Assembly (NCBI GenBank): GCA_002269645.1
Contig: NIVC01000315.1
Location: 1 to 50,531 of the forward strand
Length of the DNA stretch: 50,531 nucleotides
From: Macrostomum lignano
Taxonomy: Eukaryota
Direction: 5' to 3'
Shown one piece after another: positions 15,583 through 49,200 of this stretch (the first letter of the stretch is position 1; the number at the start of each line of letters is the position of its first letter). A program made the translations under genes and the position numbers. Under the pieces are notes generated by a model. The model saw nothing but the letters and a program-made list of their open reading frames with translations, had not been told where the DNA came from and ran no database searches.

Positions 15583-18500
15583 ATGGCGGCCTGCGACTAT
15601 CGCGCCTGGCACGAGCGCCTCCGAGCAGTGGCGCCAGAGACTCGCGCAGTCCCACTGAGCGAGTCCTTCATCAGCTACCTGCTGGCCGATGGCATGCAGC
15701 TGCCGCCCCATCATCAGGCCGGTGTCAATGGCGTTGCCAATGGCAACGATAGCGACGATAGCAACAGTCAATCCAGCTTTGCATTGAGCGATGACGATGC
15801 AGACCTCAGGCAGGTTGGCAACGATCCCGACAGCTTGTTTCCCGAGCTCAAAGCTGAGGTACACGAGGGTGTTTGAGCAGGTCTTCTTACTACTCAAGCT
15901 TGCTTGCTTGCTTCTAGCAGTGTGTAGATTATCTTTCTCTGACAGATCTTTACGATTCTATATTGCAATCTTTTTTCATCGCTATTAAACTTAATCACAG
16001 GCACTTTGAATGCCACATATCCAATAATCCATGATCCCAGACAGTGAGATCCCATATCCAATAATCCTCAACCCCAGACAGTGAGATCCCATATCCAATA
16101 ATCCTTAATCCCAGACAGTAAGATCCCATATCCAATAATCCTTAATCCCAGACTGTGAGATCCCATATCCAATAATCCTTGATCCCAGTCAGTGAGATCC
16201 CATATCCAATAATCCTTTATCCCAGACAGTGAGATCCCATATTCAATAATCCTCAACCCCAGACAGTGAGATCCCATATCCAATAATCCTTAATCCCAGA
16301 CAGTGAGATCCCATATTCAATAATCCTTAATCCCAGACATTGGGATCCCATATCCAATAATCCTTAATCCCAGACAGTGAGAATCCCATATCCAATAATC
16401 CTTTATCCCAGACAGTAAGATCCCATATTCAATAATCCTTAATCCCAGACAGTGAGATCCCATATTCAATAATCCTTAATCCCAGACATTGGGATCCCAT
16501 ATCCAATAATCCTTAATCTCAGACAGTGAGATCCCATATCCAATAATCCTCAACCCCAGACAGTGAGAATCCCATATCCAATAATCCTTGATCCCAGACA
16601 GTGAGATCCCATATCCAATAATCCTTAATCCCAGACTGTGAGATCCCATATCCAATAATCCTTTATCCCAGTCAGTGAGATCCCATATCCAATAATCCTT
16701 GATCCCAGTCAGTGAGATCCCATATCCAATAATCCTTAATCCCAGACAGTGAGATCCCATATTCAATAATCCTCAACCCCAGACAGTGAGATCCCATATC
16801 AAATAATCCTTAATCCCAGACAGTGAGATCCCATATCCAATAATCCTTTATCCCAGACAGTGAGATCAATGATGAATGATGATAATACCCCCAAAATCGG
16901 CAACCCGAATCCCTAAAATCCCATTTCCTGCAGGTGGAATCCGCCATCGCCACCCTGGGCGGCAGCGCCTTCCCCAAGCTGACCTGGACGGCGCCGAAAG
17001 ACGCTCGCTGGGTGAGCTTCGATAACAGCCTGCGCTGCGGCTCCTTCTTAGACGTCTGCATGCTTTTGAAATCTTCGGACGACTGCGCGCACGACCTGCT
17101 CCGGGCGCTGCCGGCCTGCCGCTGCGACTGCGGCGACGGCATCGATGAGACTGAGCACTGCTGCTCCAGGCAGCCCTACGGCCACTGCCTGCTGCTCAGG
17201 CGGTGGGTTGACGTGCCCGAGTCCGGCGAGTTTCGCTGCTTCTGGCGTCGGGGTCGCCTTGCGGCCGTCTGTCAGCGAAGGCTGGCCGCCAGCTATCCTC
17301 ATCTGGCCGATGCGGCCGGCGTTGACCGCCTGCTTGACCGGTAGGGGCTGCTGAGGGCGGGAGGTCATGCGAGGACAGCTTGGTTGCTATAGTAAATGCC
17401 AGTCAGTTGGACAGAACCTGATCTCAAGTTTCTGCGTCCTCACTCAGCCCCAGTAGGGTTACCTGAGTTAACTGAAGTTACCTGAGTTTAGGAAGGTCAT
17501 TAGGCCTCATAAATTAAACAGTTAAAAATTAAGTTATTTAAAGCCAGGAATCAATTAATTTGGGGTCACCTAAAGACAGTAATGAATCTATTTGGGGTCA
17601 CATAAGGACAGTAATGAATCTATTTGGGGTCACATAAGGACAGTAATTAATCTATTTGGGGTCACATAAGGACAGTAATGAATCTATTTGGGGTCACATA
17701 AGGACAGTAATGAATCTATTTGGGGTCACCTAAGGACAGTAATGAATCTATATGGGGTCACCTAAGGACAGTAATGAATCTATATGGGGTCACCTAAGGA
17801 CAGGAATGAATCTATATGGGGTCACCTAAGGACAGGAATGAATCTATATGGGGTCACCTAAGGACAGTAATGAATCTATTTGGGGTCACCTAAGGACAGT
17901 AATGAATCTATTTGGGGTCACATAAGGACAGTAATTAATATATTTGGGGTCACATAAGGACAGTAATGAATCTATTTGGGGTCACCTAAGGACAGTAATG
18001 AATCTATTTGGGGTCACCTAAGGACAGTAATGAATCTATATGGGGTCACCTAAGGACAGGAATGAATCTATTTGGGGTCACATAAGGACAGTAATGAATC
18101 TATTTGGGGTCACCTAAGGACAGTAATGAATCTATTTGGGGTCACCTAAGGACAGTAATGAATCTATATGGGGTCACCTAAGGACAGTAATGAATCTATT
18201 TGGGGTCACCTAAGGACAGTAATGAATCTATTTGGGGTCACCTAAGGACAGTAATGAATCTATATGGGGTCACCTAAGGACAGGAATGAATCTATTTGGG
18301 GTCACATAAGGACAGTAATGAATCTATTTGGGGTCACCTAAGGACAGTAATGAATCTATTTGGGGTCACATAAGGACAGTAATGAATCTATATGGGGTCA
18401 CCTAAGGACAGTAATGAATCTATTTGGGGTCACCTAAAGACAGGAATGAATCTATTGGGGTCACATAAGGACAGTAATGAATCTATTGGGGTCACCTAAG

Positions 18501-19109: not shown

Positions 19110-19520
19110 TGAGATTTTGATTTCGAAGGGGTGAGATTTTGATGATTGAGATTCTACTAGGCTGAAATTTGTACTTCATAGGGGTGAGATTTTGATATCT
19201 GATTGAGATTCTACTAGGGCGATATTTTATTTTCAAAAGGGTGAGATTTTGATTTCGTATGGGGTGAGATTTTAATTTCTGAGTGAGATTCTATTCAATA
19301 CTAGGGTGAGATTTTAATTTCAAGAAGGGTGAGATTTTGTATTCGTAGGTGAGATTTTTATTTCGTAGGGATCAGTGTTTGATATCTGAGTGAGATTCTT
19401 TTAGGGTAAGATTTAATTTCACAGGGGTGAGATTTTGATTTCGAAGGGGTGAGATTTTAAAATCTGAGTGTCATTATGCTACTAGGGTGAGATAAGATTC
19501 TAAAGGAATCTTTAGGGTGA
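19110..19520. repeat. Degenerate repeat with GGGGTGAGATTTT core, immediately 3' of CDC123
   Basis: Many imperfect copies of (g)ggtgagattttgatttc with variable spacing. Confidence 0.8.
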
Positions 19521-21641: not shown

Positions 21642-29419
<7,778 letters not shown>

Positions 29420-34915: not shown

Positions 34916-37627
34916 ACCATTCTGGCGCAGCCAAAATTTTCAAGAATAATTCGACAGGTGGAAAAATGGCTTGGTAATTTCTACTGTTGGAGCCAAAAGT
35001 GGAAGCAGAATTTTTAATAATTTGATGTTTCGATCGGGGTTATTTCAAGGTAGCACTTCTATATATGCGAAATTAAAAGCAGCACCATTTGAAAACAAAT
35101 ACAAGTACAAATGAACTAAAATAGTGAGAGGAATTGTCACTTGCTCTCAAAAGCTAAAACTGCTGCCTTATCCTAAGATTTATTGGCAAGAGGCAGTTAA
35201 ACTAAAATAATAAATGGAAGCATTTATCAGCACATGTAAAACACATAATAGACAAAAAGTTAAAAGCCAAATTCGAAAATAAATAGTAGAAGACAGATTA
35301 CCGAAAAGTTCCAAAAGATAGACTGATTCAGACTGAAATATTGATTTATTTGCCTATTAGTGGGACACTGAATTGCCGAATCCTAATATGCTTTTCGATA
35401 AAAATGTTATAGGGCAATTGAGAGAGTCAATTATTTGAAAGTTAGGCACGCTGATTCTTGCCTTTTGAAAATTGGAGACAGAATTTTACACACTTTGATG
35501 CGCCGATTGTCGATGCTACTATTCCAATATGACTAGAAAAAAAGACTAAGAAAATATGAAAAAAAATCAAAGATCGAATATGTCTTAGGGTTAATGGAGC
35601 AAACATAGGAAAGCTATTAAGTGAAAGCCGGTTATCAAAGGTAATTTTGCGCGTAATGTATTGTACGGAAATTTCTACGATCTTATCATCTCTTTTACAA
35701 TTAACACCAGAAACTGGTTACAAAAGCAGCTAACTTACCCCCTGTCTCTTTCTCGTTGGGGCGAAATTTTTATGTCTTTTAAGCAATGAAACAAAAATGT
35801 CCAGTTGTTTGCGTGGCAATTTTTTAGTTAAGAGTAAAACAGCTCATGAAAAATTATAACTTCATTTCCGACTTCTGAACTTTTTAAAACAATTTTAGTA
35901 AATGGTAAACAGAAAAATAACTTAGCTTATCGTCGCCTTATCGGGTTGCCAAATATTCAGTTATGTTTGTATTAAAAGTAGCAACCACTCAATATGAAAT
36001 TACAGTAAAAAATAAATTAGGATAAACAGAAATATTTTTAATCAACAAAAATAGATTATTAGTTAAAAATTATATTTTTAAAACAAATTTTTACATTAAA
36101 GAAATAGAAACTTTGTTTAATGTCTTCGGTTTTTTCCTGCACGGACAAATTATTACCTTTCTAAGAACAACGAACGCTATGAAATCCAGCATGGATAATA
36201 AATGGATTGATTCAACTTTAAGATACTTTTGAGTTGAGCGTTGATATTGATTCCTCAGCGTAAGCATGAGAAAAATAAATCAATGAGAGAAAAGTTAGAA
36301 TAACATTTCTATTTATAGTTAAGTTTTATGCTGAAGTGTTAAGAATTAAGAATATACTTGTAGGATAAAAAAATAGTTCTCAAAACCTTTAGACTTTAAA
36401 CAGTAACAAAACTCAAACAAAAATCTTTGGAATGTGAGGCGTTACTTTTTTGCAAATGATTCAAGTAAATATTTTCTATAAAAGTAAGAATATGAGAAGC
36501 AAGTATCTGAATGAAAAGAATATCTGAATGAATTGAAAAGAACATGTTCTTCTCTTCATTGACATTAGTTTAGAATTATATTATCAATATTTTTCATACT
36601 ACTACTAATACTACTATACTAGTATAAAGTTATTATTTTGTATGTGAAAATGCTTTAAATGCTTTATCTGTTCCATTGTCTAGATTTTGCTTAATGTATT
36701 TTAGAGTGAAAACTGAAAAGTGACACCTAGACTCTAGATGTCATTTAAAAAATGGTAGGCCAAGGTAATAACTTATTTATTGAATTATAGTTTATGAGAG
36801 TTTCCTTTTTACAAACACTGTTTTAGACATGTTATCTATGAAGAATAATGAACATTTATTAAGTCATTAAAATTTATTGCATTACAAATCTTCAACTTTA
36901 AATATAAATTATAAAATTATTATTAAGACATTTATCAATCTATTTCTATGACATTTTTGTTTAATAATTTTATAGATGTGTAGATTAAGAAATTCATATT
37001 CCTATATATATGCAAACCTTAGCCTTTGTAAAAAATAAGCCAAGTGTTGGTATAATATAAATATTTTTGTGTACAATTTTGTGTACAAATACAATTCTAG
37101 TTCCAATCATGCACAATCTTCTAGCTAGGGATCAACAAGTCATAGCACAACCAAAGCAAACTAAAATTGCAACAAATCAGTGCAGATATAATAAAGCCAT
37201 GTAATAAAAATGGTCAAACAATAAACATGATAAAACAAAGCTTAAAAATCACTAAAAATTACTAGTCTTGGTAGTATTAATACTAATTATTCTGTGTTTA
37301 AATTAAAATGTATATTATAAAAAAATTCATGGTCATGCACAGTTTCATGCACAGTCTAGTTCCAATCATGCACAAAAAATCGTGGTTGGTTGATCCCTGC
37401 TTCTAGACAGTATGTTTTGATTAACTTATTAACTTTTGATGTATGGCTTAACCATTTTTTTCAAAAATGTATAAATGTTTATATTTGGGCCTGATTAGAT
37501 GAATAGGGGCAATGCTTTTTGATAGTATCAATTTTCTATAAAGGTTTATTATCTAGTATTTTTCTTCCTAGTTGCTAGCTTGCCCCTAGTTAATCTCTAA
37601 CAAATCTAACAATATTTCAGAGCAAGC

Positions 37628-40600
37628 ATGCATGACAGTGGGTTGCTATTGGTTACCCAGGCCATCACCCGCCATCACCTGCAGCGTCTGCTTCGCCTGG
37701 CTGGTGAGCGAGTGCGCGGCCGCCTCTATCTCTGCCTGGAGCGAGCGCCCCTGACCCCCAGAACCATCAGCCTATGCTATAGCCAGCCCACCCGTCCCGG
37801 CCTGGATGTTCGCTACCTGCACTCGGACTGGCCGAAACATGCTGGCCGAGTCTGCGACCTGCTCATGCATGATTGTCCGAGCTTGTCACCTGGGCAGGCT
37901 GTTGACTTGGCCAACAGGTACCTAGCTGGCCGGCCCGGGATGGCAGAGGCTCTGACGGTGAGCTTGAATGCAGATCTTCCCACATCTTCGTGTAATCTTC
38001 CTGCTTATTTTCATATCTTTCCACATTTTGCGTCTATCTTTTATAATCTGGCATCTTTTAAGCTTCCCATATCTTTCCACACCTTTCCGTATCTTCCCGT
38101 ACTTTCCCGCATCTTTCCGTATCGCTTGTATCTTCCCGTATCTTTCCGCATCTTTCCGTATCGCTTGTATCTTCCCGTATCTTTCCGCATCTTTCCGTAT
38201 CGCTTGTATCTTCCCGTATCTTCCCGTATCTTTCCGTATCGCTTGTATCTTCCCGTATCTTTCCGCATCTTTCCGTATCGCTTGTATCTTCCCGTATCTT
38301 CCCGTATCTTTCCGTATCGCTTGTATCTTCCCGTATCTTCCCGTATCTTTCCGTATCGCTTGTATCTTCCCGTATCTTTCCGCATCTTTCCGTATCGCTT
38401 GTATCTTCCCGTATCTTCCCGTATCTTTCCGTATCGCTTGTATCTTCCCGTATCTTTCCGTATCGCTTGTATCTTCCCGTACTTTCCCGCATCTTTCCGT
38501 ATCGCTTGAATCTTCCCGTATCTTTCCGTATCGCTTGTATCTTCCCGTATCTTTCCGTATCGCTTGTATCTTCCCGTATCTTCCCGTATCTTTCCGCATC
38601 TTTCTGTATCGCTTGTATCTTCCCGTATCTTTCCGTATCTTTCCGTATCTTTCTGTATCGCTTGTATCTTCCCGTATCTTTCCGTATCTTTCCGTATCTT
38701 TCTGTATCGCTTGTATCTTCCCGTATCTTTCCGTATCTTTCCGCATCTTTCTGTATCGCTTGTATCCTCCCGTATCTTCCCGTACTTTCCCGCATCTTCC
38801 CGTATCGCTTGTATCCTCCCGTATCTTCCCGTATCTTTCCGCATCTTTCTGTATCGCTTGTATCCTCCCGTATCTTCCCGTATCTTTCCGCATCTTTCTG
38901 TATCGCTTGTATCCTCCCGTATCTTCCCGTATCGCTTGTATCTTCCCGTATCGCTTGTATCTTCCCGTATCGCTTGTATCTTCCCGTATCCCTCCGCATC
39001 TTTCCATATCTTCCAAATCTTCCCAAATCTTCCCATATCTTCTCGTATCTTCCCGTCTTTTTGACCTGCAGAATCTTCTTCAGTCACCTGTAAAATTGCC
39101 CTCAATTCTCAAAGGAAAATCGCCCTCAACTACCTGTAGAAACTCATATTTTTATAATCATATAATTTTTTATTGTGTAATCTGACCGCAACTTCTCGTA
39201 TATTTTTTAATCCTTCCCATCCGAATCCCCCATCCCAGGTGGAGCACCCGGAGCCCGAGGAGCCCGAGGAGGACTTGGCCGACCCGGACTGGCGGCCCGA
39301 CCAGTTTGCCAACGTGGCCCTTGGCGGCACCTTCGACCGGCTGCACTCAGGACACAAGATCCTGCTCGCCACCGGGGCGCTGCTCGCCAGCCGGGTGCTC
39401 ACAATCGGCATCACCGGGCCCGGGTTGCTAGGCAACAAAGTGCTGCCGGATTTAATTCAGTCGTATCGAGAGCGGGCGGCCGCTGTAGTGGACTTCCTGG
39501 CCGACACCCGGCCGGACGGGCCCGTGTATCATGTGACCGAGCTGGCCGAGCCGCTGGGCCCGCCGGCCCGCCAGGCCGACTACCAGGCCCTGGTGGCCAG
39601 TCCGGAGACCCGGTCGGGCTGCGGCCGGATCAACGCGGCTCGGACAGCGGCCGGGTGGCCGGAACTGCCCGTCCATTGCGTGCCCTTTGCCCAGGAGGAG
39701 GAGGGAGCGACTCCGGCACCGATTAATGGTGAGGGAGCCTGTTCACCCTAACCTGTTCACCCCAACCTGTTCACCCAACCTGTTCACCCTAACCTGTTCA
39801 CCCCAACCTGTTCACCCCAACCTGTTCACCCCAACCTGTTCACCCCAACCTTTTCACCCCAACCTGTTCACCCAACCTGTTCACCCTAACCTGTTCACCC
39901 CAACCTGTTCACCCTAACCTGTTCACGCCAACCTGTTCACGCCAACCTGTTCACACCAATCTGTTCACCTCAACCTGTTCACACCAACCTGTTCACCCTA
40001 ACCTGTTCACCCCAACCTGTTCACCCCAACCTGTTCACCCCAACCTGTTCACTCCAATCTGTTCACCCCAACCTGTTCACCTCAACCTGTTCACACCAAC
40101 CTGTTCACACCAATCTGTTCACCTCAACCTGTTAACCCCAAGCTGTTCACCTCAACCTGTTCACCCCAAGCTGTTCACATCAACCTGTTCACCCCGACCT
40201 GTTCACACCAACCTGTTCACCCCGACCTTTTCACCCCAACCTGTTCACCCCAACCTGTTCACCCCAACCTGTTCACCCTAACCTGTTCACCCCAAGCTGT
40301 TCACCCCAAGCTGTTCACCCTAACCTGTTCACCCCAACCTGTTCACCCTAACCTGTTCACCCAAGCTGTTCACACCAAGCTGTTCACCCTAACCTGTTCA
40401 CCCCAACCTGTTCACACCAATCTGTTCACCTCAACCTGTTCACCTCAACCTGTTCACACCAACCTGTTCACCCCGACCTGTTCACCCCAACCTGTTCACC
40501 CCAACCTGTTCATCCCAATCTGTTAACCCCAACCTGTTCACCTCAACCTGTTCACCTCAACCTGTTCACCCCAACCTGTTCACCCCGACCTGTTCACCCC

Positions 40601-42198
40601 GACCTGTTCACCCCGACCTGTTCACACCAATCTGTTAACCCCAACCTGTTCACCTCAACCTGTTCACCCCGACCTGTTCACCCCGACCTGTTCACCCCGA
40701 CCTGTTCACACCAATCTGTTCACCTCAATCTGTTCACCTCAACCTGTTCACCCCAAGCTGTTCACACCAACCTGTTCACCCCGACCTGTTCACCTCAACC
40801 TGTTCACCCCAACCTGTTGACACCAACCTGTTCACCCCGACCTGTTCAACCCAGAGACGAAGCTCAGCTCCTCAACCGGTCGGTACCGCCTGCTGGGCGC
40901 GCCGCTCCGTCCGCCGCTCCGCCCGCCGGTGCCCGGACGGCCTTATGTGCTCGGCCTCACGGGCGGCTCCGGCTCGGGCAAGAGCAGCGTCGGCCGCCGC
41001 CTCGCCGGCCTCGGCGCCCGCGTCGTCGACTGCGACCGGCTCGGCCACGCCGCCTACGCGCCCGGCACCGCCTGCCATCGCCGCCTGCTGGCCGAGTTCG
41101 GGCCAGAGATCGCGCCGGACGGACCGGACGGCGCCATCGACCGGAAGGCGCTTGGCCGGCGCGTCTTCGCTGACCAGTCGGCCAGACAGCGACTGAACGA
41201 CATCGTCTGGCCGGAGATCCGGCGCTTGGCTTTAGAGGTCCGTCATGCAGAATCCGCCGCTGCCACCTGGAGAATCTCCCTCAGCCACCTGTAGAATCTC
41301 CCTCAGCCACCTGTAGAATCTCCCTCAGCCACCTATAGAATCTCCCTCAGCCACCTATAGAATCTCCCTCAGCCACCTCTAGAATCTCCCTCAGCCACCT
41401 ATAGAATCTCCCTCAGCCACCTGTAGAATCTCCCTCAGCCACCTATAGAATCTCCCTCAGCCACCTCTAGAATCTCCCTCAGCCACCTAGAGAATCTCCC
41501 TCAGCCACCTGTAGAATCTCCCTCAGCCACCTGTAGAATCGCTCTCAAATCTCATACTCATAGGAGAATCGCCCTCAAATCTCGTAGGAGAATCGCCCTC
41601 AATTCCCATAGGATAATTGCCCTCAAATCTCATAGGAGAATCGCCCTCAAATCTCATAGGAGAATCGCCCTCAAATATCATAGAAGAATCGCCCTCAAAT
41701 CTCATAGGAGAATCGCCCTCAAATCTCATAGGAGAATCGCCCTCAAATCTCATAGGAGAATCGCCCTCAAATCTCATGGGAGAATCGCCCTCAAATCTAA
41801 AGATAATCGCCCTCAGCCACCTAAAGAACCGGAACAAAATCGCCTACCCCCAGGCTGTGCACTCCGGCCCCCAGTCGGCCAGTCCAGACGTCGTGGTCCT
41901 TGACGCTGCCGTGCTCCTAGAAGCTGAGTGGCAGTGCCTCTGCCACGAAGTGTGGCTCTGCCTCATCCCGAAGCGGGAGGCGGTCAAGCGGCTGACGGAG
42001 CGGGACGGCCTGACGGAGGAGGCGGCGCAGGCTCGACTGGCCGCTCAGCTGACCGATGCGGACCGGCTCAGCTGGGCTAGCGTCGCTTTGTGCACCCTGT
42101 GGGAGCCGGAGGCCACCCAGGCTCAAGTTGAGCTGGCCTGGAAACGGTTGCTAAGGGAACGATTGGGCGCTACTCCGGGTCCGCAGTCGAATTTGTAG
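37628..42198 (+). CDS. COASY: Bifunctional coenzyme A synthase (phosphopantetheine adenylyltransferase + dephospho-CoA kinase), 515 aa. Exons 37628-37957, 39239-39728, 40855-41237, 41854-42198
   Basis: VALGGTFDRLHSGHK (HxGH motif), ALVASPETRSGCGRINAAR, TKLSSSTGRYRLLG, PYVLGLTGGSGSGKS (P-loop), VVDCDRLGHAAY, IDRKALGRRVF, LNDIVWPEI, DAAVLLEAEW...HEVW. GT-AG introns of phase 0, 1 and 0 join in frame (330+490+383+345 = 1548 nt). Confidence 0.96.
37975..39060. repeat. Composite array of 9-10-bp monomers (ATCTTCCCGT, ATCTTTCCGY, ATCGCTTGT), COASY intron 1
   Basis: Direct reading. Confidence 0.96.
39737..40850. repeat. 14-bp minisatellite (AACCTGTTCACCCC)n, about 80 units, making up essentially all of COASY intron 2
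   Basis: Direct reading. Confidence 0.98.
41249..41830. repeat. Adjacent 22-bp (AGAATCTCCCTCAGCCACCTRT, about 13 units) and 24-bp (AGAATCGCCCTCAAATCTCATAGG, about 11 units) arrays, COASY intron 3
   Basis: Direct reading. Confidence 0.96.
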
Positions 42199-42234
42199 AT
42201 CAGTTTTGTTTTTTGTGTTCATTGATTCCGCTGT

Positions 42235-43128
42235 AGAATCGCCCTCAGCTACCTATTGGAGAATCGCCCTCAGCTACCTATTGGAGAATCGCCCTCAGCT
42301 ACCTATTGGAGAATCGCCCTCAGATACCTATTGGAGAATCGCCCTCAGCTACCTATTGGAGAATCGCCCTCAGCTACCTATTGGAGAATCGCCCTCAGCT
42401 ACCTATTGGAGAATCGCCCTCAGCTACCTATTGGAGAATCGCCCTCAGATACCTATTGGAGAATCGGCCTCAGCCACCTATTGGAGAATCGCCCTCAGCT
42501 ACCTATTGGAGAATCGCCCTCAGATACCTATTGGAGAATCGGCCTCAGATACCTATTGGAGAATCGCCCTCAGATACCTATTGGAGAATCGCCCTCAGCT
42601 ACCTATTGGAGAATCGCCCTCAGATACCTATTGGAGAATCGCCCTCAGCTACCTATTGGAGAATCGCCCTCAGATACCTATTGGAGAATCGCCCTCAGAT
42701 ACCTATTGGAGAATCGCCCTCAGCTACCTATTGGAGAATCGCCCTCAGATACCTATTGGAGAATCGCCCTCAGCTACCTATTGGAGAATCGCCCTCAGCT
42801 ACCTATTGGAGAATCGCCCTCAGCTACCTATTGGAGAATCGCCCTCAGCTACCTATTGGAGAATCGCCCTCAGCTACCTATTGGAGAATCGCCCTCAGCT
42901 ACCTATTGGAGAATCGCCCTCAGCCACCTATTGGAGAATCGCCCTCAGCCCCTATTGGAGAATCGCCCTCAGCCCCTATTGGAGAATCGGCCTCAGCCCC
43001 TATTGGAGAATCGCCCTCAGCTACCTATTGGAGAATCGCCCTCAGCTACCTATTGGAGAATCGCCCTCAGCTACCTATTGGAGAATCGCCCTCAGCCCCT
43101 ATTGGAGAATCGGCCTCAACCCCCTATT
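42235..43128. repeat. 25-bp minisatellite (AGAATCGCCCTCAGCTACCTATTGG)n, about 36 units, about 36 bp after the COASY stop
   Basis: Direct reading. Confidence 0.98.
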
Positions 43129-43648
43129 CAAAATTGAAGTGACATTGCTATTCAATAATTATTTACCTGATTTTTGGCTGCAATGTTGTACTGTTGAAAA
43201 TGTCCAAATCTTTTATATACCTTACTGTCATAATGATGATGAAATTCGTACAGAAATACAACAGGTCATTTGTTTCGTCTGCAGTTGCTTGATTTCTACT
43301 GATTAATTTGTTCACAAAGCTATTAAGAGCAATCTGCTCTGTGTTGAATATTTAATTTATTTTCTCTGATTATGTGTTTACCTTGATTTCGAAGGGAAAA
43401 GTAAAAATTCCGGTATACTACTTAGTTATCCGTGGTTTAGTAGCCTGCCAAGAATGCAAGTGTTGCTTTGTCCTCAATGATCGTGAGATCTCTTTAACAG
43501 AGTCAACTTTTTGGCGGGCGAAACAAACTCACGAGGGCTCAAAAGCCAACAATTCGCGCAAATACAAAATACAAACTCATATTGAAGCGAGCAAAAGCAA
43601 CACAACACAACAAGGGTACTAATATCGAGTTCATCAACAACAGTTACT

Positions 43649-45412
43649 TCAGCTGTAAGTCAGTCGCTCAGGTGCAGCGCACTTCCTCATCGAACGGCGA
43701 AGATGCAGCATGGCGTCTGGCTACGCCTCAGCAGCAGCACCGTCAGCAAAAACTTCAAGTGCGTCCTTCGGCACCCATCGCACTGCGGCACCGCTGCCGC
43801 TGGTGTGGCTTGGTCGGAAGCTGACTGACCGCGGCCGGCTTGAGCACCTGGTCCACGTGCCTGTGTGCGTCTCTGCCGTCATCGAACCGGCACGTGAAGT
43901 CGGCCGCACCAGAAATGTCTCCAGCGTCCGTCACTCGCGAAGTCTCGCGCCAGCACCGAGTCGCCGACATTAATGCGACAGTCGTGCGCGTGGGCGTCGT
44001 GCTGCTCCTGCAGTGCCTGCTGTACGGCCACCCGGGCGGGCAGGTCAGGGCGGACTCGGTCGAGCAACGATTTCAGCCTTCGCCCCATCAGCAACTCGCA
44101 GGAAGCCCTCCCGGTAGTCGCATGCGGCGTGACTCGGTACGTCAGGAGGAACCGGGAGACTCGCTTCTCCAAAGAGCCGCTTCGCTGCTTGGCCAGCTCA
44201 CGCTTCAGAGTCTGAACTGCTCGCTCTGCCTGGCTGTTGGACGCCGGGTGGTACGGAGCCGTGCGCACGTGCCGGATGCCGTTCTTGCTCAGGAATGTCT
44301 CCATCTCCGCGCTGACCAGGTTCGGACCAAGCTGGACCGCAGCTTCTCGATAGTCGCAGTCGACAACGTCGAAGGCATCACATACACGTCCATCCATTTG
44401 GAGTGGGCGTCAACGACAACGAGCAACATCCGGCCTTGGACCCGCCCGGCGTAGTCAATGTGCAGGCGCGACCAGGGCTTGTCCGGCCACGCCCACGGCT
44501 GCAGTGGAAACGGACCCGCCGACTTCTGCATCTCCTGGCACTCGGTGCACGCGGTGACCAGCCGCTCGATCGCCTCGTCCAGCTTGGGATACCAGAAAAC
44601 GCTTCTAGCCAGCGCCTTCATTCTCGTGGCGCCCTGGTGCCCCTGGTGCAGGCAGTGCAGCAGCGCCTCCCGACCGGCCTCGGGAACTACGACTCGGCAG
44701 CCCCAGAGCAGACAGCCGTCTTGGGTGCTCAGCTGGTCGGCTCGCGTGCAGTACGGCTGCAGCTCAGGTGGCGGCCGCTCCGGCCAGCAGCCGGTCTCGG
44801 TGAAGCGCAGAACTCGGGACAAGTCCGGGTCTGTCCGAGTCCAGGCCCGGATGGGCCGAGCTGTCACCGGTCCCTCGTCCAGGAAGTCCATGAGTAGGAT
44901 GACTTCAGCTGGAGTTAGCGCTTCCTTCGGCTTCTCCGGCAGCGGCAGCCGACTCAGCGCATCGGCTCGGAGCAGCGACTTGCCCGCTCGGTGGACCATG
45001 GAGTACTGGTAGCCGGCCAGGAGCAGCGCCCACCGCTGGATTCTGCCAGAAGCCAGTGCTGGTATCGGCTTGGACTGGTGCAGCAGCCCGAGCAGCGGCT
45101 TGTGGTCGCTCACCAGCGTCAGCGTGAAGTCTCGGCCGTACAGGTACATGTGGAATTTCTTATCTCCGTAGATGATCGCGAGCGCCTCCTTCTCGAGCTG
45201 TGAGTATCGGGTCTGTCGACTCCGTTGATCCGTCGGCTGATGACGGCGCCGATGCCGTAAAGCGAGGCGTCGCACTCGAGCACCAGCGGCTTCTGACGGT
45301 CGAAATGCCCGAGCACCGGTGCCGGCTGAGTAGCGACTTGCACCTGCGAAAAGCTTCGTCCTGCACAGCGTCCCATCGCCAGGGGGCGCCCTTGTTCAGC
45401 AGCAGCAGCCCT
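43649..45412 (-). mobile_element. Degenerate Ty3/Gypsy LTR-retrotransposon pol fragment (RT connection/RNase H, zinc-binding, integrase core, C-terminus); 5'-truncated
   Basis: LECDASLYGIGAVI, YSQLEKEALAIIYG, SDHKPL, ADALSRLP, LHQGHQG...WYPKL...CTECQ (HHCC), PWSRLHIDYAG, VDAHSKW, APYHPASNSQAERAVQTLK, RRHVDQ, and a terminal LRRSMRKCAAPERLTYS-stop. Multiple frameshifts and internal deletions; no LTR recognised. Confidence 0.93.
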
Positions 45413-46207
45413 TCGCCACGCTCCCTCTCTTATCTCCCTTCTCCCCACTCTCGCTTTTCATCTCCCTTCTCCCTGGCAGTCTGCGTTCTCTAAAAATTGC
45501 GATGGAGACGCGCTCAGCATGACAGCATCGCAGAACCATTAGCACTGCGGCTTTGCAACCTTAGAGAACATTTCCACTCTAATCCCCTATTCGCCCTCTG
45601 TTGTCCATTTTCTGCTTTGCATTGAGTGAAAGAGCTGGATTTCGGATGCAGGGGCAGGGAGTTTGCAGTGCTTGAATGCCGTAGTCTAGCTGGGAGAATC
45701 AGCTGGGTTAGATAGGCGAAAGCCGACGGTGCACTCTGCACTTTGCCTGTGTATTGCACTGCAGTTCGAGCCCCAGCTGGACTGGCTGTGGCTGCCTGGG
45801 GGAGGGGAAAGGAGGTGCTGCCGTTGCCGCAAGACTGTACCGGCTTTGCAGTTGCGCACACCGGGAATGCCTGGGGCTGGATGCCTATGCAGATCTGCAA
45901 GGAGGGCCGGCAGGGGATAGCAGGGGAGAGCTAGGGAACCGCTAGCCATCCCCTCAGCCCCATGGCTCCCAGCCTTCGTGTCACGGTGGATCTTTGCTGC
46001 AAAACGAAGGAGAAAGTTTTCAGTGTCCCCAGCAACCGCCCCAACCCTTCGGTCCATATTGCCTTGGTCCGACCAAGCAGCCCCCGGCCTCGTAGTTCAA
46101 AGTAGCCGATAGACTTTGTGAAGCAATTCTCTTATACTCTTAAGGAGGAATTCGATTCCCGATTTCCCGACGACAGCAGCAGAGCACTGCTTGATCTGCC
46201 AGGAAAC

Positions 46208-49200
46208 ATGCAGCAATTCGGGCAGCTGTTGCTGCTGCTGCTAGTGGTAGTTGGCTGCTGCTGCGGTACAGGTAAGAAGCTGCACTAGTACTTCATGACA
46301 TTACATAATTTCACTCAATACACAGCAACTCATTCACTTTCATCAGGAAGTTTACTACGAGTCCTTACCCAACTCCAGAAACCTCTGCCTTACTCCGGAT
46401 TGTCATGCCACACTCTCCACCCCACTCTTACCCCATTCCTTATCTTCTCTAGCCCTGTCTGAAGCCTCTCCTCACTTCACACCTCGCCTCTCCACCCCAC
46501 TCTTACACTATTCCTTATCTTCTCTAGCCCTGCCTGAAGCCTCTCCTTACTTCACACCTCGCCTCTCCAACCCACTCTTACACTATTCCTTATCTTCTCT
46601 AGCCCTGCCTGAAGCCTCTCCTCACTTCACACCTCGCCTCTCCACCCCACTCTTACCCCATTCCTTATCTTCTCTAGCCCTGTCTGAAGCCTCTCCTTAC
46701 TTCACACCTCGCCTCTCCAACCCACTCTTACACTATTCCTTATCTTCTCTAGCCCTGCCTGAAGCATCTCCTCACTTCACACCTCGCCTCTCCACCCCAC
46801 TCTTACACTATTCCTTATCTTCTCTAGCCCTGCCTGAAGCATCTCCTCACTTTACACCTCGCCTCTCCACCCCACTCTTACACTATTCCTTATCTTCTCT
46901 AGCCCTGCCTGAAGCCCAATTCACACTTCGTCCTCAATCTATCCATAATTATTTATCTCCACCTTCATTACGAAGCGCACGGTATCTATGGGAAACTAAG
47001 ATTTCAATATCGACTTCCGCAGCCAGTGCCAAGTGCTCCTACAACGGCATCCAGTACGATGAGGGCGACGCCATTGACACGGGCAAACCGTGCCAGGACT
47101 GCTTCTGCAGGGGAGGCGCGGTAGCCTGCAGCAATCGCAGGTGCAGCCCAGTAAGAGACTGCAACAGACTGGAGACCCTGCCGGGCGAATGCTGCCCAGT
47201 CTGCGTGGGTGAGTGCGGCTGCTTTTGTTGCAACGAAAACATTTCCTGAGTAGAAGAGAAAAAGAGTTTCAGTAGCCCAAGCTGGGATTCTGCTTTTATC
47301 TTCCTTCATTTAATGCAGTGCAATACATTTATTGGGTGAGATTCAGCATCAATGGGTGAGATTCAACATCTGCGGGTGAGATTCAGCATCAATGGGTGAG
47401 ATTCGGCATCTGCGGGTGAGATTCGGCATCAATGGGTGAGATTCAGCATCAATGGGTGAGATTCGGCATCAATGGGTGAGATTCAGCATCAATGGGAGGG
47501 ATTCTGCATCAATGGGTGAGATTCAGCATCAATGGGGGAGATTCAACATCTGCGGGTAAGATTCGGCATCAATGGGTGAGATTCGGCATCAATGGGTGAG
47601 ATTCGGCATCTGCGGGTGAGATTCGGCATCAATGGTGAGATTCAGCATCAATGGGTGAGATTCGGCATCAATGGGTGAGATTCAGCATCAATGGGAGGGA
47701 TTCTGCATCAATGGGTGAGATTCAGCATCAATGGGGGAGATTCAACATCTGCGGGTAAGATTCGGCATCAATGGGTGAGATTCGGCATCAATGGGTGAAA
47801 TTCGGCATCAATGGGTGAGATTCAGAATCAATGGGTGAGATTCAGCATCAATGGGAGGGATTCTGCATCAATGGGTGAGATTCGGCATCAATGGGTGAGA
47901 TTCGGCATCAATGGGTGAGATTCAGAATCAATGGGTGAGATTCAGCATCAATGGGAGGGATTCTGCATCAATGGGTGAGATTCGGCATCAATGGGTGAGA
48001 TTCGGCATCAATAGGAGGGATTCTGCATCAATGGGTGAGATTCGGCATCAATGGGTGAGATTCGGCATCAATGGGTGAGATTCGGCATCAATGGGAGGGA
48101 TTCTGCATCAATGGGTGAGATTCAGCATCAATGGGTGAGATTGGCATCAATGGGTGAGATTCGGCATCAATGGGTGAGATTCAGCATCAATGGGTGAGAT
48201 TCGGCATCAATGGGTGAGATTCAGAATCAATGGGTGAGATTCAGAATCAATGGATGAGATTCAGTCTCAATTGCTAGTGCGCCACATTCGTAAACGTGAA
48301 TCTCTAAATTTCAGACCGACCGTCACCACCAGTGGAGTTCACCACACCTAAGCGAATTGTGAGCAATTTCTGTTGCACGAGCTGCAGTCCGACTTACAGA
48401 CTTTCTCTTTTTTATGCCTAGCATGCAAATTCTGATCCCTACTTTGCATTCCTTTGCACTTTTAGACTACAACACCAACGACAACTACTACTACTACGAC
48501 TACCACAACACCAACTACTACTACTACGACTACCACCACACCAACAACTACTACTACGACTACCACACCTACTACAACCACTACTACACCGACGACTACA
48601 ACAACAACTACTCCGAGAACTAGGCCAACAAGAGCTCCTCAGGTAGGGTGCCGACGTTTCAGATAATTTTTTCTCAGCCAATCAACGTTCTTGATTATCA
48701 CTATTCTGAAATTCTCAATATTAATAAATTACCAATGTACATTCATCGTCAACTAATGTACATTCACCCTCAACGACTGTACATTCATGCTCAACCAATG
48801 TACATTAATCCTCAACCAATATACAATTATCCTCAACCAATGTACATTAATCCTCAACCAGTGTACAATAATCCTCAACCAATGTACATTCACCCTCAAC
48901 AAATGTACATTCACCCTCAACCAATGTACATTCATCCTCAACCAATGTACAATTATCCTCAACCAATGTACATTCATCCTCAACCAATGTACATTCATCC
49001 TCAACCAATGTACATTCATCCTCAACCAATGTACATTCATCCTCAACCAATGTACATTCATCCTCAACCAATGTACATTCATCCTCAACCAATGTACATT
49101 CATGCTCAACCAATGTACATTCATCCTCAACCAATGTACATTCATCCTCAACCAATGTACATTCACCCTCACCAATGTACATTCATCCTCAACCAATGTA

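What the first reader, a model, noticed from the sequence alone, without database searches (positions are those of the whole stretch)
39070..43128. One short a-b-a seed appears three times around COASY: unamplified in intron 1, amplified in intron 3, and as a third array after the stop
Seen in the sequence: intron 1 carries a single 68-bp a-b-a block: AGAATCTTCTTCAGTCACCTGT (22 nt, 39070-39091), AAAATTGCCCTCAATTCTCAAAGG (24 nt, 39092-39115) and AAAATCGCCCTCAACTACCTGT (22 nt, 39116-39137). Intron 3 has the same order amplified: a x about 13, b x about 11, a x 1, with a last degenerate AAAATCGCC running into the acceptor. The 3' flank has a 25-bp derivative of a, x about 36. All are in the same orientation and separated by intact exons. 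Inference: a short sequence was copied to several sites of one gene and then amplified independently. That points to a small mobile or gene-converted minisatellite seed and is the best clue in this window to how the intronic arrays originate.
Basis: partly seen in the sequence, partly recalled or inferred. Interest (0 to 1): 0.72.

Follow-up and report, generated by a model that had tools for sequence, protein, structure and literature searches.

The report
Flatworm minisatellite family copied within COASY
A short run of three diverged 22-24-bp repeat units sits once in intron 1 of the flatworm Macrostomum lignano COASY gene, and the same units have grown into long tandem arrays in intron 3 and after the stop codon. 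This is a clear but ordinary example of how minisatellites are seeded locally and then expand, with no sign of function.

Summary
The window is a complete 50.5-kb contig of Macrostomum lignano, and the gene is COASY with three introns.

- **Homology.** The intron-1 block (39070-39137) aligns without gaps to a collapsed copy of intron 3 (one a, one b, the last hybrid unit) at 56/68. The score is 46 against 7.7±1.4 for shuffles. Homology extends to 78 bp and then stops.
- **No element hallmarks.** I found no target-site duplication, no inverted ends and no shared flanks.
- **Stability.** The block is identical and single-copy in three assembled haplotypes. The arrays differ between them: a 5-13 exact units, b 11-16, c 36-44 with different variants.
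- **Interpretation.** Copying followed by independent amplification is supported. "Mobile" is not shown.
The 3' unit c is a hybrid of the b head and the a body, not simply a derivative of a. The other COASY arrays (10-bp in intron 1, 14-bp in intron 2) are unrelated. A probable further member lies inverted at 25584-26004, in an intron of the neighbouring kinase gene.
- **Limit.** Genome-wide spread could not be tested with these tools.

Verdict: a new member of a known kind, namely a minisatellite family that follows the dissemination-then-amplification model. Interest is modest.

The parts
37628..37957 (+). COASY exon 1 (start codon to donor CTGACG|GTGAGC)
   Evidence: The gene model gives a 515-aa ORF. 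The annotated protein PAA94075.1 aligns 505/506 without gaps across the junctions.
37958..39238 (+). Intron 1
38063..39054 (+). Unrelated array in intron 1, built on a 10-bp unit (GTATCTTCCC type, with higher-order periods of 39 and 49 bp). It is about 1 kb here, 0.25 kb in L001 and 2.4 kb in L009.
   Evidence: TRF. Unit similarity to a and b is not above shuffles (p about 0.9).
39064..39141 (+). 78-bp patch homologous to collapsed intron 3: ACCTGC (tail of a preceding unit), then u1 (a-like, 39070-39091), u2 (b-like, 39092-39115), u3 (a'/c-like, 39116-39137), then AGAA (head of the next unit). It is single-copy.
   Evidence: 64/78 identity. The 68-bp core is 56/68 with z about 27. The core is identical in L001 and L009.
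39239..39728 (+). COASY exon 2 (PPAT domain)
39729..40854 (+). Intron 2. It is 99% filled by an unrelated 14-bp array (CCTGTTCACCCCAA, about 80 copies, 39738-40853). The acceptor AG lies inside the last unit.
   Evidence: Not related to unit a (p 0.29).
40855..41237 (+). COASY exon 3 (start of the dephospho-CoA kinase domain)
41238..41853 (+). Intron 3. After the first 11 bases it consists entirely of units of the family.
41249..41270 (+). Degenerate leading unit x (AGAATCCGCCGCTGCCACCTGG). Its tail ACCTGG corresponds to the ACCTGC that precedes the intron-1 block.
41271..41534 (+). a array, 22 bp x 12 (AGAATCTCCCTCAGCCACCTnn). There are 13 exact units in L001 and 5 in L009.
41535..41802 (+). 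b array, 24 bp x 11 (AGAATCGCCCTCAAATCTCATAGG). There are 11 units in L001 and 16 in L002/L009.
41803..41824 (+). Single hybrid unit a' (ATAATCGCCCTCAGCCACCTAA): b-type head with a-type body.
41825..41853 (+). Degenerate terminal units (AAGAACCGGAAC, then AAAATCGCCTACCCCCAG) that supply the 3' splice site.
   Evidence: Read directly from the sequence; junction confirmed.
41854..42198 (+). COASY exon 4, ending in the stop codon TAG
42235..43130 (+). c array in the 3' flank, 25 bp with 36 heads (AGAATCGCCCTCAG[C/A]TACCTATTGG), plus a few 24-bp GCCCCT variants near its 3' end. L001 has 44 heads. L002/L009 have 39 units, nearly all the 24-bp variant.
25584..26004 (-). Probable further member of the family: a 23-24-bp array (CGCATCCCCTCAGATACAAAATGG, about 14 copies with decayed edges). 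It lies in an intron of the neighbouring minus-strand protein-kinase gene, inverted relative to COASY.
   Evidence: At unit level, 3 of 40000 shuffles reach the score against c, and 0 of 40000 against the c GATAC variant. Sequence; kinase orientation. A profile built without this array does not detect it.

Best explanation
This is a lineage-specific minisatellite family of Macrostomum lignano. Its units are 22-25 bp and share a 13-14-base head, AGAATC[G/T]CCCTCA(G).

An old, short and internally diverged proto-array of at least 3.5 units (tail-a-b-a'-head) came to exist at two places in COASY, because a patch of about 80 bp was copied at the DNA level between introns. The mechanism was most likely ectopic templated repair or gene conversion, or reinsertion of a small circular by-product. 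This step is inferred.

A derivative unit (c) was seeded just after the stop codon, and probably another in the neighbouring gene's intron. Each site then followed its own course.
- In intron 3, units a and b were each multiplied head-to-tail by slippage or unequal exchange. The nearly identical heads of neighbouring units offer the misalignment points.
- Unit c did the same in the 3' flank.
- The intron-1 copy stayed at one copy per unit.

The arrays keep turning over, with gain and loss of units and spread of variants, much faster than the flanking DNA changes. Nothing points to a function. The DNA is spliced out or lies outside the coding region, and it behaves as neutral repetitive DNA.
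For: **Shown.**
- Homology of the block to collapsed intron 3: 56/68 ungapped, z about 27, unique in the window. It extends to 78 bp, with partial units at both ends.
- Units a, b and c are related far beyond shuffles: z 12.6, 11.1 and 7.0; a versus b p = 3e-4.
- The block is identical and single-copy in three contigs (window, L001, L009), while array sizes differ. Exact a units number 12, 13 and 5. b units number 11, 11 and 16. c heads number 36, 44 and 39, with haplotype-specific variants. The a arrays of the window and L001 differ by one inserted unit although the flanking exons are 100% identical.
- u2 shares rare variants with edge or minor b units.
- No TIR, TSD, tRNA, Rfam match or flank homology.

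**Context.** Simple and tandem repeats make up 15% of the Mlig_3_7 assembly (PMC5730564). The dissemination-then-local-amplification model for tandem repeats is published (PMC4935994).
Against: - The copying mechanism is inferred only. At 18% divergence, no junction microhomology can be read.
- The direction of copying (intron 3 to intron 1, or the reverse) is unknown.
- The probable relative at 25.6-26.0 kb is inverted and lies in another gene. That fits a dispersed family as well as local copying, and the rest of the genome could not be searched.
- Copy-number differences between contigs of a PacBio-based assembly may in part be assembly error.
Confidence: 0.6

Rival explanations
1. The units are the internal repeats of a dispersed transposable element (a MITE, SINE or Helitron-type element carrying a tandem-repeat core). 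The sites in and near COASY would then be independent insertions that later expanded.
For: A probable member lies inverted in a different gene 16 kb away. Many minisatellite and satellite families are known to derive from transposons (own knowledge). The genome is very rich in repeats.
Against: - Homology ends inside repeat units at both sides of the intron-1 patch.
- No shared non-repeat flanks (p 0.25-0.97), apart from one weak match that does not survive five tests: the 3'-flank lead-in against the intron-3 5' end, p 0.015.
- No TSD, no inverted ends, no tRNA or Rfam-related part.
- No further convincing match in the other roughly 45 kb of the window, so three to four same-family sites within 17 kb look clustered rather than random.
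Confidence: 0.15
2. The intron-1 block is not an unamplified seed. It is what remains of a once longer a/b array that contracted to one unit of each type.
For: Arrays of this family gain and lose units quickly. Contraction to single units is possible in principle.
Against: - The block is 18% diverged from the present consensus and keeps variants that are rare in the b array.
- It is identical in three haplotypes whose arrays all differ.
- Independent collapse of both a and b to exactly one copy each is less parsimonious.
Confidence: 0.15
3. Introns 1 and 3 are paralogous introns. One arose from the other by intron transposition (reverse splicing and reverse transcription) within the same gene, which would explain the same orientation and the intact exons between them.
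For: - Same gene and same strand.
- All three COASY intron positions are absent from Branchiostoma and Asterias, which share at least four positions with each other.
- Both introns begin with ...ATGCAGA(A)TC within 20 bases of the donor.
Against: - Homology is confined to 78 interior bases.
- The 5' ends (p 0.065) and 3' ends (p 0.25) are not significantly alike.
- The array after the stop codon and the one in the kinase gene are not explained.
Confidence: 0.04
4. Chance resemblance, or convergence of pyrimidine-rich intron sequence.
For: - Units contain acceptor-like CCCTCAG.
- Unrelated DNA can share the 13-base head. A giant-virus-like coding repeat and an array in an unidentified animal contig were found in metagenomes.
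Against: An ungapped 56/68 match with the unit order preserved. None of 5000 shuffles and no other sampled 68-mer of the window comes near it.
Confidence: 0.01

Closest known systems
Classical minisatellites / VNTRs (for example human hypervariable minisatellites)
   Same: Head-to-tail units of 22-25 bp. Internal variant units arranged in blocks. Degenerate units at the array edges. Rapid change of copy number between alleles while the flanks stay the same.
   Different: Several related arrays and an unexpanded three-unit copy lie within 4 kb of one gene, which gives a before-and-after view. Two of the introns consist almost entirely of array, and the terminal unit provides the splice acceptor.
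Dissemination-then-local-amplification model of tandem-repeat evolution (Ruiz-Ruano et al. 2016, PMC4935994)
   Same: Short arrays act as seeds at several loci, and only some of them are amplified into long arrays. Families of related units diverge between loci.
   Different: The scale here is a single gene and its neighbour (4-17 kb), not chromosomes. The seed is a heterogeneous block whose individual units were amplified separately. Genome-wide dissemination has not been shown.
Transposon-borne tandem repeats (MITE- or Helitron-associated satellites; own knowledge)
   Same: One repeat family at several nearby sites, possibly in both orientations.
   Different: No terminal inverted repeats, no target-site duplications and no conserved non-repeat part.
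Sequence-similar introns within one gene, attributed to reverse splicing in Oikopleura (Denoeud et al. 2010; own knowledge, not read here)
   Same: Similar sequence in two introns of the same gene, in the same orientation, in a lineage whose intron positions differ from other animals.
   Different: Only 78 interior bases are shared, not whole introns. Related arrays also lie outside introns of this gene.

Membership tests
Minisatellite / VNTR | Head-to-tail tandem units of about 10-100 bp | tested here: met
   TRF: a 22 bp x 13.0, b 24 bp x 10.9, c 25 bp x 35.5, at 91-96% matches.
Minisatellite / VNTR | Copy number varies between alleles or haplotypes while the flanks are conserved | tested here: met
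   The window, L001 and L009/L002 differ in every array, while exons are 98.8-100% identical. Caveat: these are assembled contigs, not reads.
Minisatellite / VNTR | Variant units in blocks, with degenerate units at the edges (concerted evolution) | tested here: met
   Unit listings. The L002/L009 c array is almost entirely the 24-bp variant, which is rare in the window.
Disseminated tandem-repeat family (seed then amplification) | The same unit family at several non-adjacent loci, with short and long arrays coexisting | tested here: met
   Intron 1 (single units), intron 3 (two arrays), the 3' flank (one array) and probably 25584-26004.
Disseminated tandem-repeat family (seed then amplification) | Presence at many loci across the genome | not testable with these tools
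   No M. lignano genome collection is searchable here. A protein search with the array translation found nothing. A transposon-protein search returned no M. lignano loci.
Transposable element carrying tandem repeats | Defined ends (terminal inverted repeats or other termini) and target-site duplication | tested here: not met
   No inverted repeats bound any site. Homology ends inside units and there are no flanking direct repeats beyond unit periodicity.
Transposable element carrying tandem repeats | A conserved non-repeat part shared between copies | tested here: not met
   Flank comparisons are not above shuffles, except one at p 0.015 that does not survive five tests.
Transposed or duplicated intron (reverse splicing) or introner-like element | Homology over the whole intron, including both ends | tested here: not met
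   5' ends p 0.065, 3' ends p 0.25. The intron-1 10-bp array is unrelated.
Transposed or duplicated intron (reverse splicing) or introner-like element | Intron at a lineage-specific position | tested here: inconclusive
   None of the three positions is shared with Branchiostoma or Asterias. Intron 3 lies about 8 residues, and one phase, from a Branchiostoma intron. Only two outgroups were compared and no flatworm.

The most novel reading that the evidence does not exclude
The repeat family may be more than passive filler. Each unit carries a ready-made pyrimidine tract plus CAG. A degenerate terminal unit supplies the real acceptor of intron 3, and the same holds for the unrelated array of intron 2. 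All three COASY introns also sit at positions not seen in two deuterostomes. In M. lignano, tandem-repeat seeds might therefore help to create or propagate introns, an introner-like role for minisatellites. The intron 1 / intron 3 similarity would then be a trace of that process.
Probability: 0.06. Interest if true: 0.8.

Novelty: new member of a known kind. Interest (0 to 1): 0.3.

Why it matters
The locus shows three stages of minisatellite birth side by side in one gene. There is a stable, diverged three-unit block, the same block with two of its units separately expanded, and a derived unit expanded elsewhere. Three haplotypes serve as natural replicates. It could be used to measure what makes a short repeat start to expand in a genome where tandem repeats are 15% of the DNA and hamper assembly. 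It does not reveal a new kind of element or a function.

Tried and rejected
1. **Protein search with the translated c array**, hoping to find other loci whose arrays had been called as ORFs: no hits.
2. **Protein search with the retrotransposon pol fragment**, to collect more M. lignano loci as a genome sample: the best hits were 55% identical and none was named as M. lignano. The genome-wide test therefore could not be done.
3. **Metagenome scan with a tandem-head pattern**: four contigs.
   - Two are an AT-rich, virus-like coding repeat (LESPSPPQ).
   - Two are an array in an unidentified animal contig that shares only the repeat.
   - I treat these as unrelated or uninformative. Prokaryotic genomes gave 0 hits.
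4. **Idea that all COASY arrays descend from one unit**: rejected. The intron-1 10-bp array gives p 0.9 and the intron-2 14-mer p 0.29.
5. **Idea that the degenerate array at 19.1-19.5 kb (AAAATCTCACCC heads) belongs to the family**: only p 0.01-0.04 before correction, and p 0.5 against the block. Not accepted.
6. **Whole-intron homology of introns 1 and 3**: not supported.
7. **Rfam, tRNA and inverted-repeat scans**: nothing.
8. **Wasik et al. 2015 genome paper**: not held in the library.
Full report
**What the window is.** The predicted protein from four exons on the plus strand is 100% identical to a Macrostomum lignano protein (BOX15_Mlig014823g1). It is about 40-50% identical to bifunctional coenzyme A synthases of many animals. 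Pfam finds the dephospho-CoA kinase domain. The 90% cluster of that protein includes BOX15_Mlig011444g1 on a contig of exactly 50,531 bases, so the window is a whole contig of the Mlig_3_7 assembly.

The gene model is:
- exon 1: 37628-37957
- intron 1: 37958-39238
- exon 2: 39239-39728
- intron 2: 39729-40854
- exon 3: 40855-41237
- intron 3: 41238-41853
- exon 4: 41854-42198

The transcript-based GenBank protein aligns 505/506 to this model without gaps at any junction.

**The observation.**
- Intron 3 holds a degenerate leading unit, 12 a units of 22 bp, 11 b units of 24 bp, one hybrid unit, and degenerate remnants that end in the acceptor.
- After the stop codon there are 36 heads of a 25-bp unit c (TRF 35.5 copies).
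- The 68-bp block of intron 1 aligns without gaps to "one a + one b + the hybrid unit" at 56/68.
- Its local score is 46. Five thousand dinucleotide shuffles gave 7.7±1.4 (maximum 17). No other 68-mer sampled every 17 bases across the window, on either strand, exceeds 17.
- With flanks included, the homology is 78 bp (39064-39141, 64/78). It starts in the tail of a preceding unit and ends in the head of a following one.

The ancestral object was therefore itself a short array of already diverged units. Unit c has the head of b (13/13) and a body like a, so "derivative of a" is only half right.

**What it is not.**
- The flanks beyond the 78 bp share nothing above shuffled controls. One comparison reached p 0.015, which does not survive five tests.
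- There are no bounding inverted repeats, no target-site duplication, no tRNA and no Rfam match.
- The other two arrays of the same gene are unrelated to the family: the 10-bp-based array of intron 1 (p 0.9) and the 14-bp array of intron 2 (p 0.29).
- Among 25 main array consensus units of the window, only a, b and c stand far out in an all-against-all comparison (z 7-12.6). A few other pairs are borderline.

**Natural replicates.** Three other contigs of the same assembly carry the locus: L001, L002 and L009.
- The block is identical and single-copy in L001 and L009, the two that include intron 1.
- The arrays differ between haplotypes:

| Array | Window | L001 | L009 (L002 agrees where it overlaps) |
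|---|---|---|---|
| Intron-1 10-bp array | about 1 kb | 0.25 kb | 2.4 kb |
| a (exact units) | 12 | 13 | 5 |
| b (units) | 11 | 11 | 16 |
| c (heads) | 36 | 44 | 39 |

- The c array of L002/L009 is almost entirely a 24-bp variant that is rare in the window.
- The window and L001 are 100% identical from the 3' part of intron 1 through exon 4, yet their a arrays differ by one inserted unit. The arrays therefore turn over much faster than the flanks. The caveat is that these are long-read assemblies.
- Unit u2 of the block carries AATTGCC and CAATTCTCA, variants found only in a few neighbouring minor b units. That fits a state older than the homogenisation of the b array.

**Is the family confined to COASY?** Probably not. 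A 23-24-bp array at 25584-26004, read on the minus strand (CGCATCCCCTCAGATACAAAATGG), matches unit c.
- Three of 40,000 unit shuffles reach the observed score, and none does for the GATAC variant of c.
- After allowing for about 100 comparisons, this remains around 0.01.
- A profile built without this array does not detect it, so I call it probable.
- It lies in an intron of the neighbouring minus-strand protein-kinase gene, inverted relative to COASY.
- I could not sample the rest of the genome.
- A scan of metagenomes found only unrelated look-alikes, and prokaryotic genomes gave none.

**Mechanism.**
- *Shown:* common descent of the sites, independent and continuing amplification, stability of the unexpanded copy, and absence of transposon hallmarks.
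- *Inferred:* a DNA-level copy of about 80 bp between introns (templated repair, ectopic conversion or reinsertion of a small circle). Unit-wise expansion then followed, by slippage or unequal exchange at the nearly identical heads of adjacent units.

This is a small-scale case of the published model in which short arrays are disseminated and some are later amplified (PMC4935994). It occurs in a genome where simple and tandem repeats are 15% of the assembly (PMC5730564); they are 29% of this window. Whether the intron-1 block never expanded or collapsed, and which site was the source, remain open.

**Side result.** None of the three M. lignano COASY intron positions is shared with Branchiostoma or Asterias, which share at least four positions with each other. 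A Haliotis copy has no introns. Introns 2 and 3 are 98-99% array, and their acceptors lie in terminal repeat units. This keeps alive, at low probability, a link between repeat seeds and intron origin. The lack of end-to-end homology between introns 1 and 3 argues against simple intron transposition.

**Verdict.** This is a new member of a known kind, with no indication of function. Interest is modest (0.3).

Noticed in passing
window 1-50531: About 26 separate tandem arrays with mostly private units (periods 2-75 bp) cover 29% of this contig. Most lie between GC-rich exons of at least five genes: D123/CDC123 on the plus strand at about 15.5-19.1 kb, a protein kinase on the minus strand at about 22-29.9 kb, COASY, a collagen at about 49.3-50.1 kb, and others.
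   Followed up: partly
window 37958-41853; L003, L004, L010: All three COASY introns are at positions not shared with Branchiostoma or Asterias, which share at least four positions with each other. The Haliotis rubra COASY-like gene has no introns. This suggests heavy intron turnover in the M. lignano lineage.
   Followed up: partly
window 39729-40854 and 41238-41853: Introns 2 and 3 are 98-99% tandem array. In both, the 3' splice site AG lies inside a degenerate terminal repeat unit. Units a and c each contain an acceptor-like CCCTCAG, so dozens of potential cryptic acceptors precede the real one.
   Followed up: no
window 16016-16867 vs 26427-27391; 19114-19460 vs 47333-48262: Two further pairs of arrays share unit cores: ATCCCAGA[C/G]AGTGAG in the first pair (inverted; p about 3e-4) and GGGTGAGATT in the second (p about 1e-3). 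Both are borderline after correction for 300 comparisons. Local sharing of seeds may be more general.
   Followed up: partly
window 43879-45448, minus strand: Fragment of an LTR-retrotransposon pol (RNase H, integrase zinc-binding and integrase core domains) split over at least two reading frames. It is 99.9% identical in L002 but only 92% in L001.
   Followed up: partly
window 36000-46400 vs L001, L002, L009: Mosaic relationship. The window is 100% identical to L001 from the 3' part of intron 1 through exon 4, but downstream of the c array it matches L002 (99.9%) better than L001 (92-98%). This suggests recombination between haplotypes or homeologues, or chimeric assembly.
   Followed up: no
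L002 1060-1100: Exon 3 of the L002 copy has a 2-base length difference (a frameshift) relative to the window. L009 aligns over exon 3 without gaps. It may be a sequencing or assembly error, or a disabled copy.
   Followed up: no
L006 13092-13341; L008 3-239 (JAAUXT01 contigs): An unidentified animal contig (with LRR-like and GPCR-like ORFs) carries a 25-bp array, AGAATCTCCCTCAGAACCTGCAGTG, whose first 14 bases equal the head of unit a. Nothing else on the contig matches the window.
   Followed up: partly
L005 12358-12611; L007 13390-13571 (Ga0129324 contigs, 24% GC): A coding 24-bp repeat (LESPS[P/Q]PQ) at the start of a gene in AT-rich, giant-virus-like contigs contains the same 13-base head. 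I take this as a chance match.
   Followed up: partly
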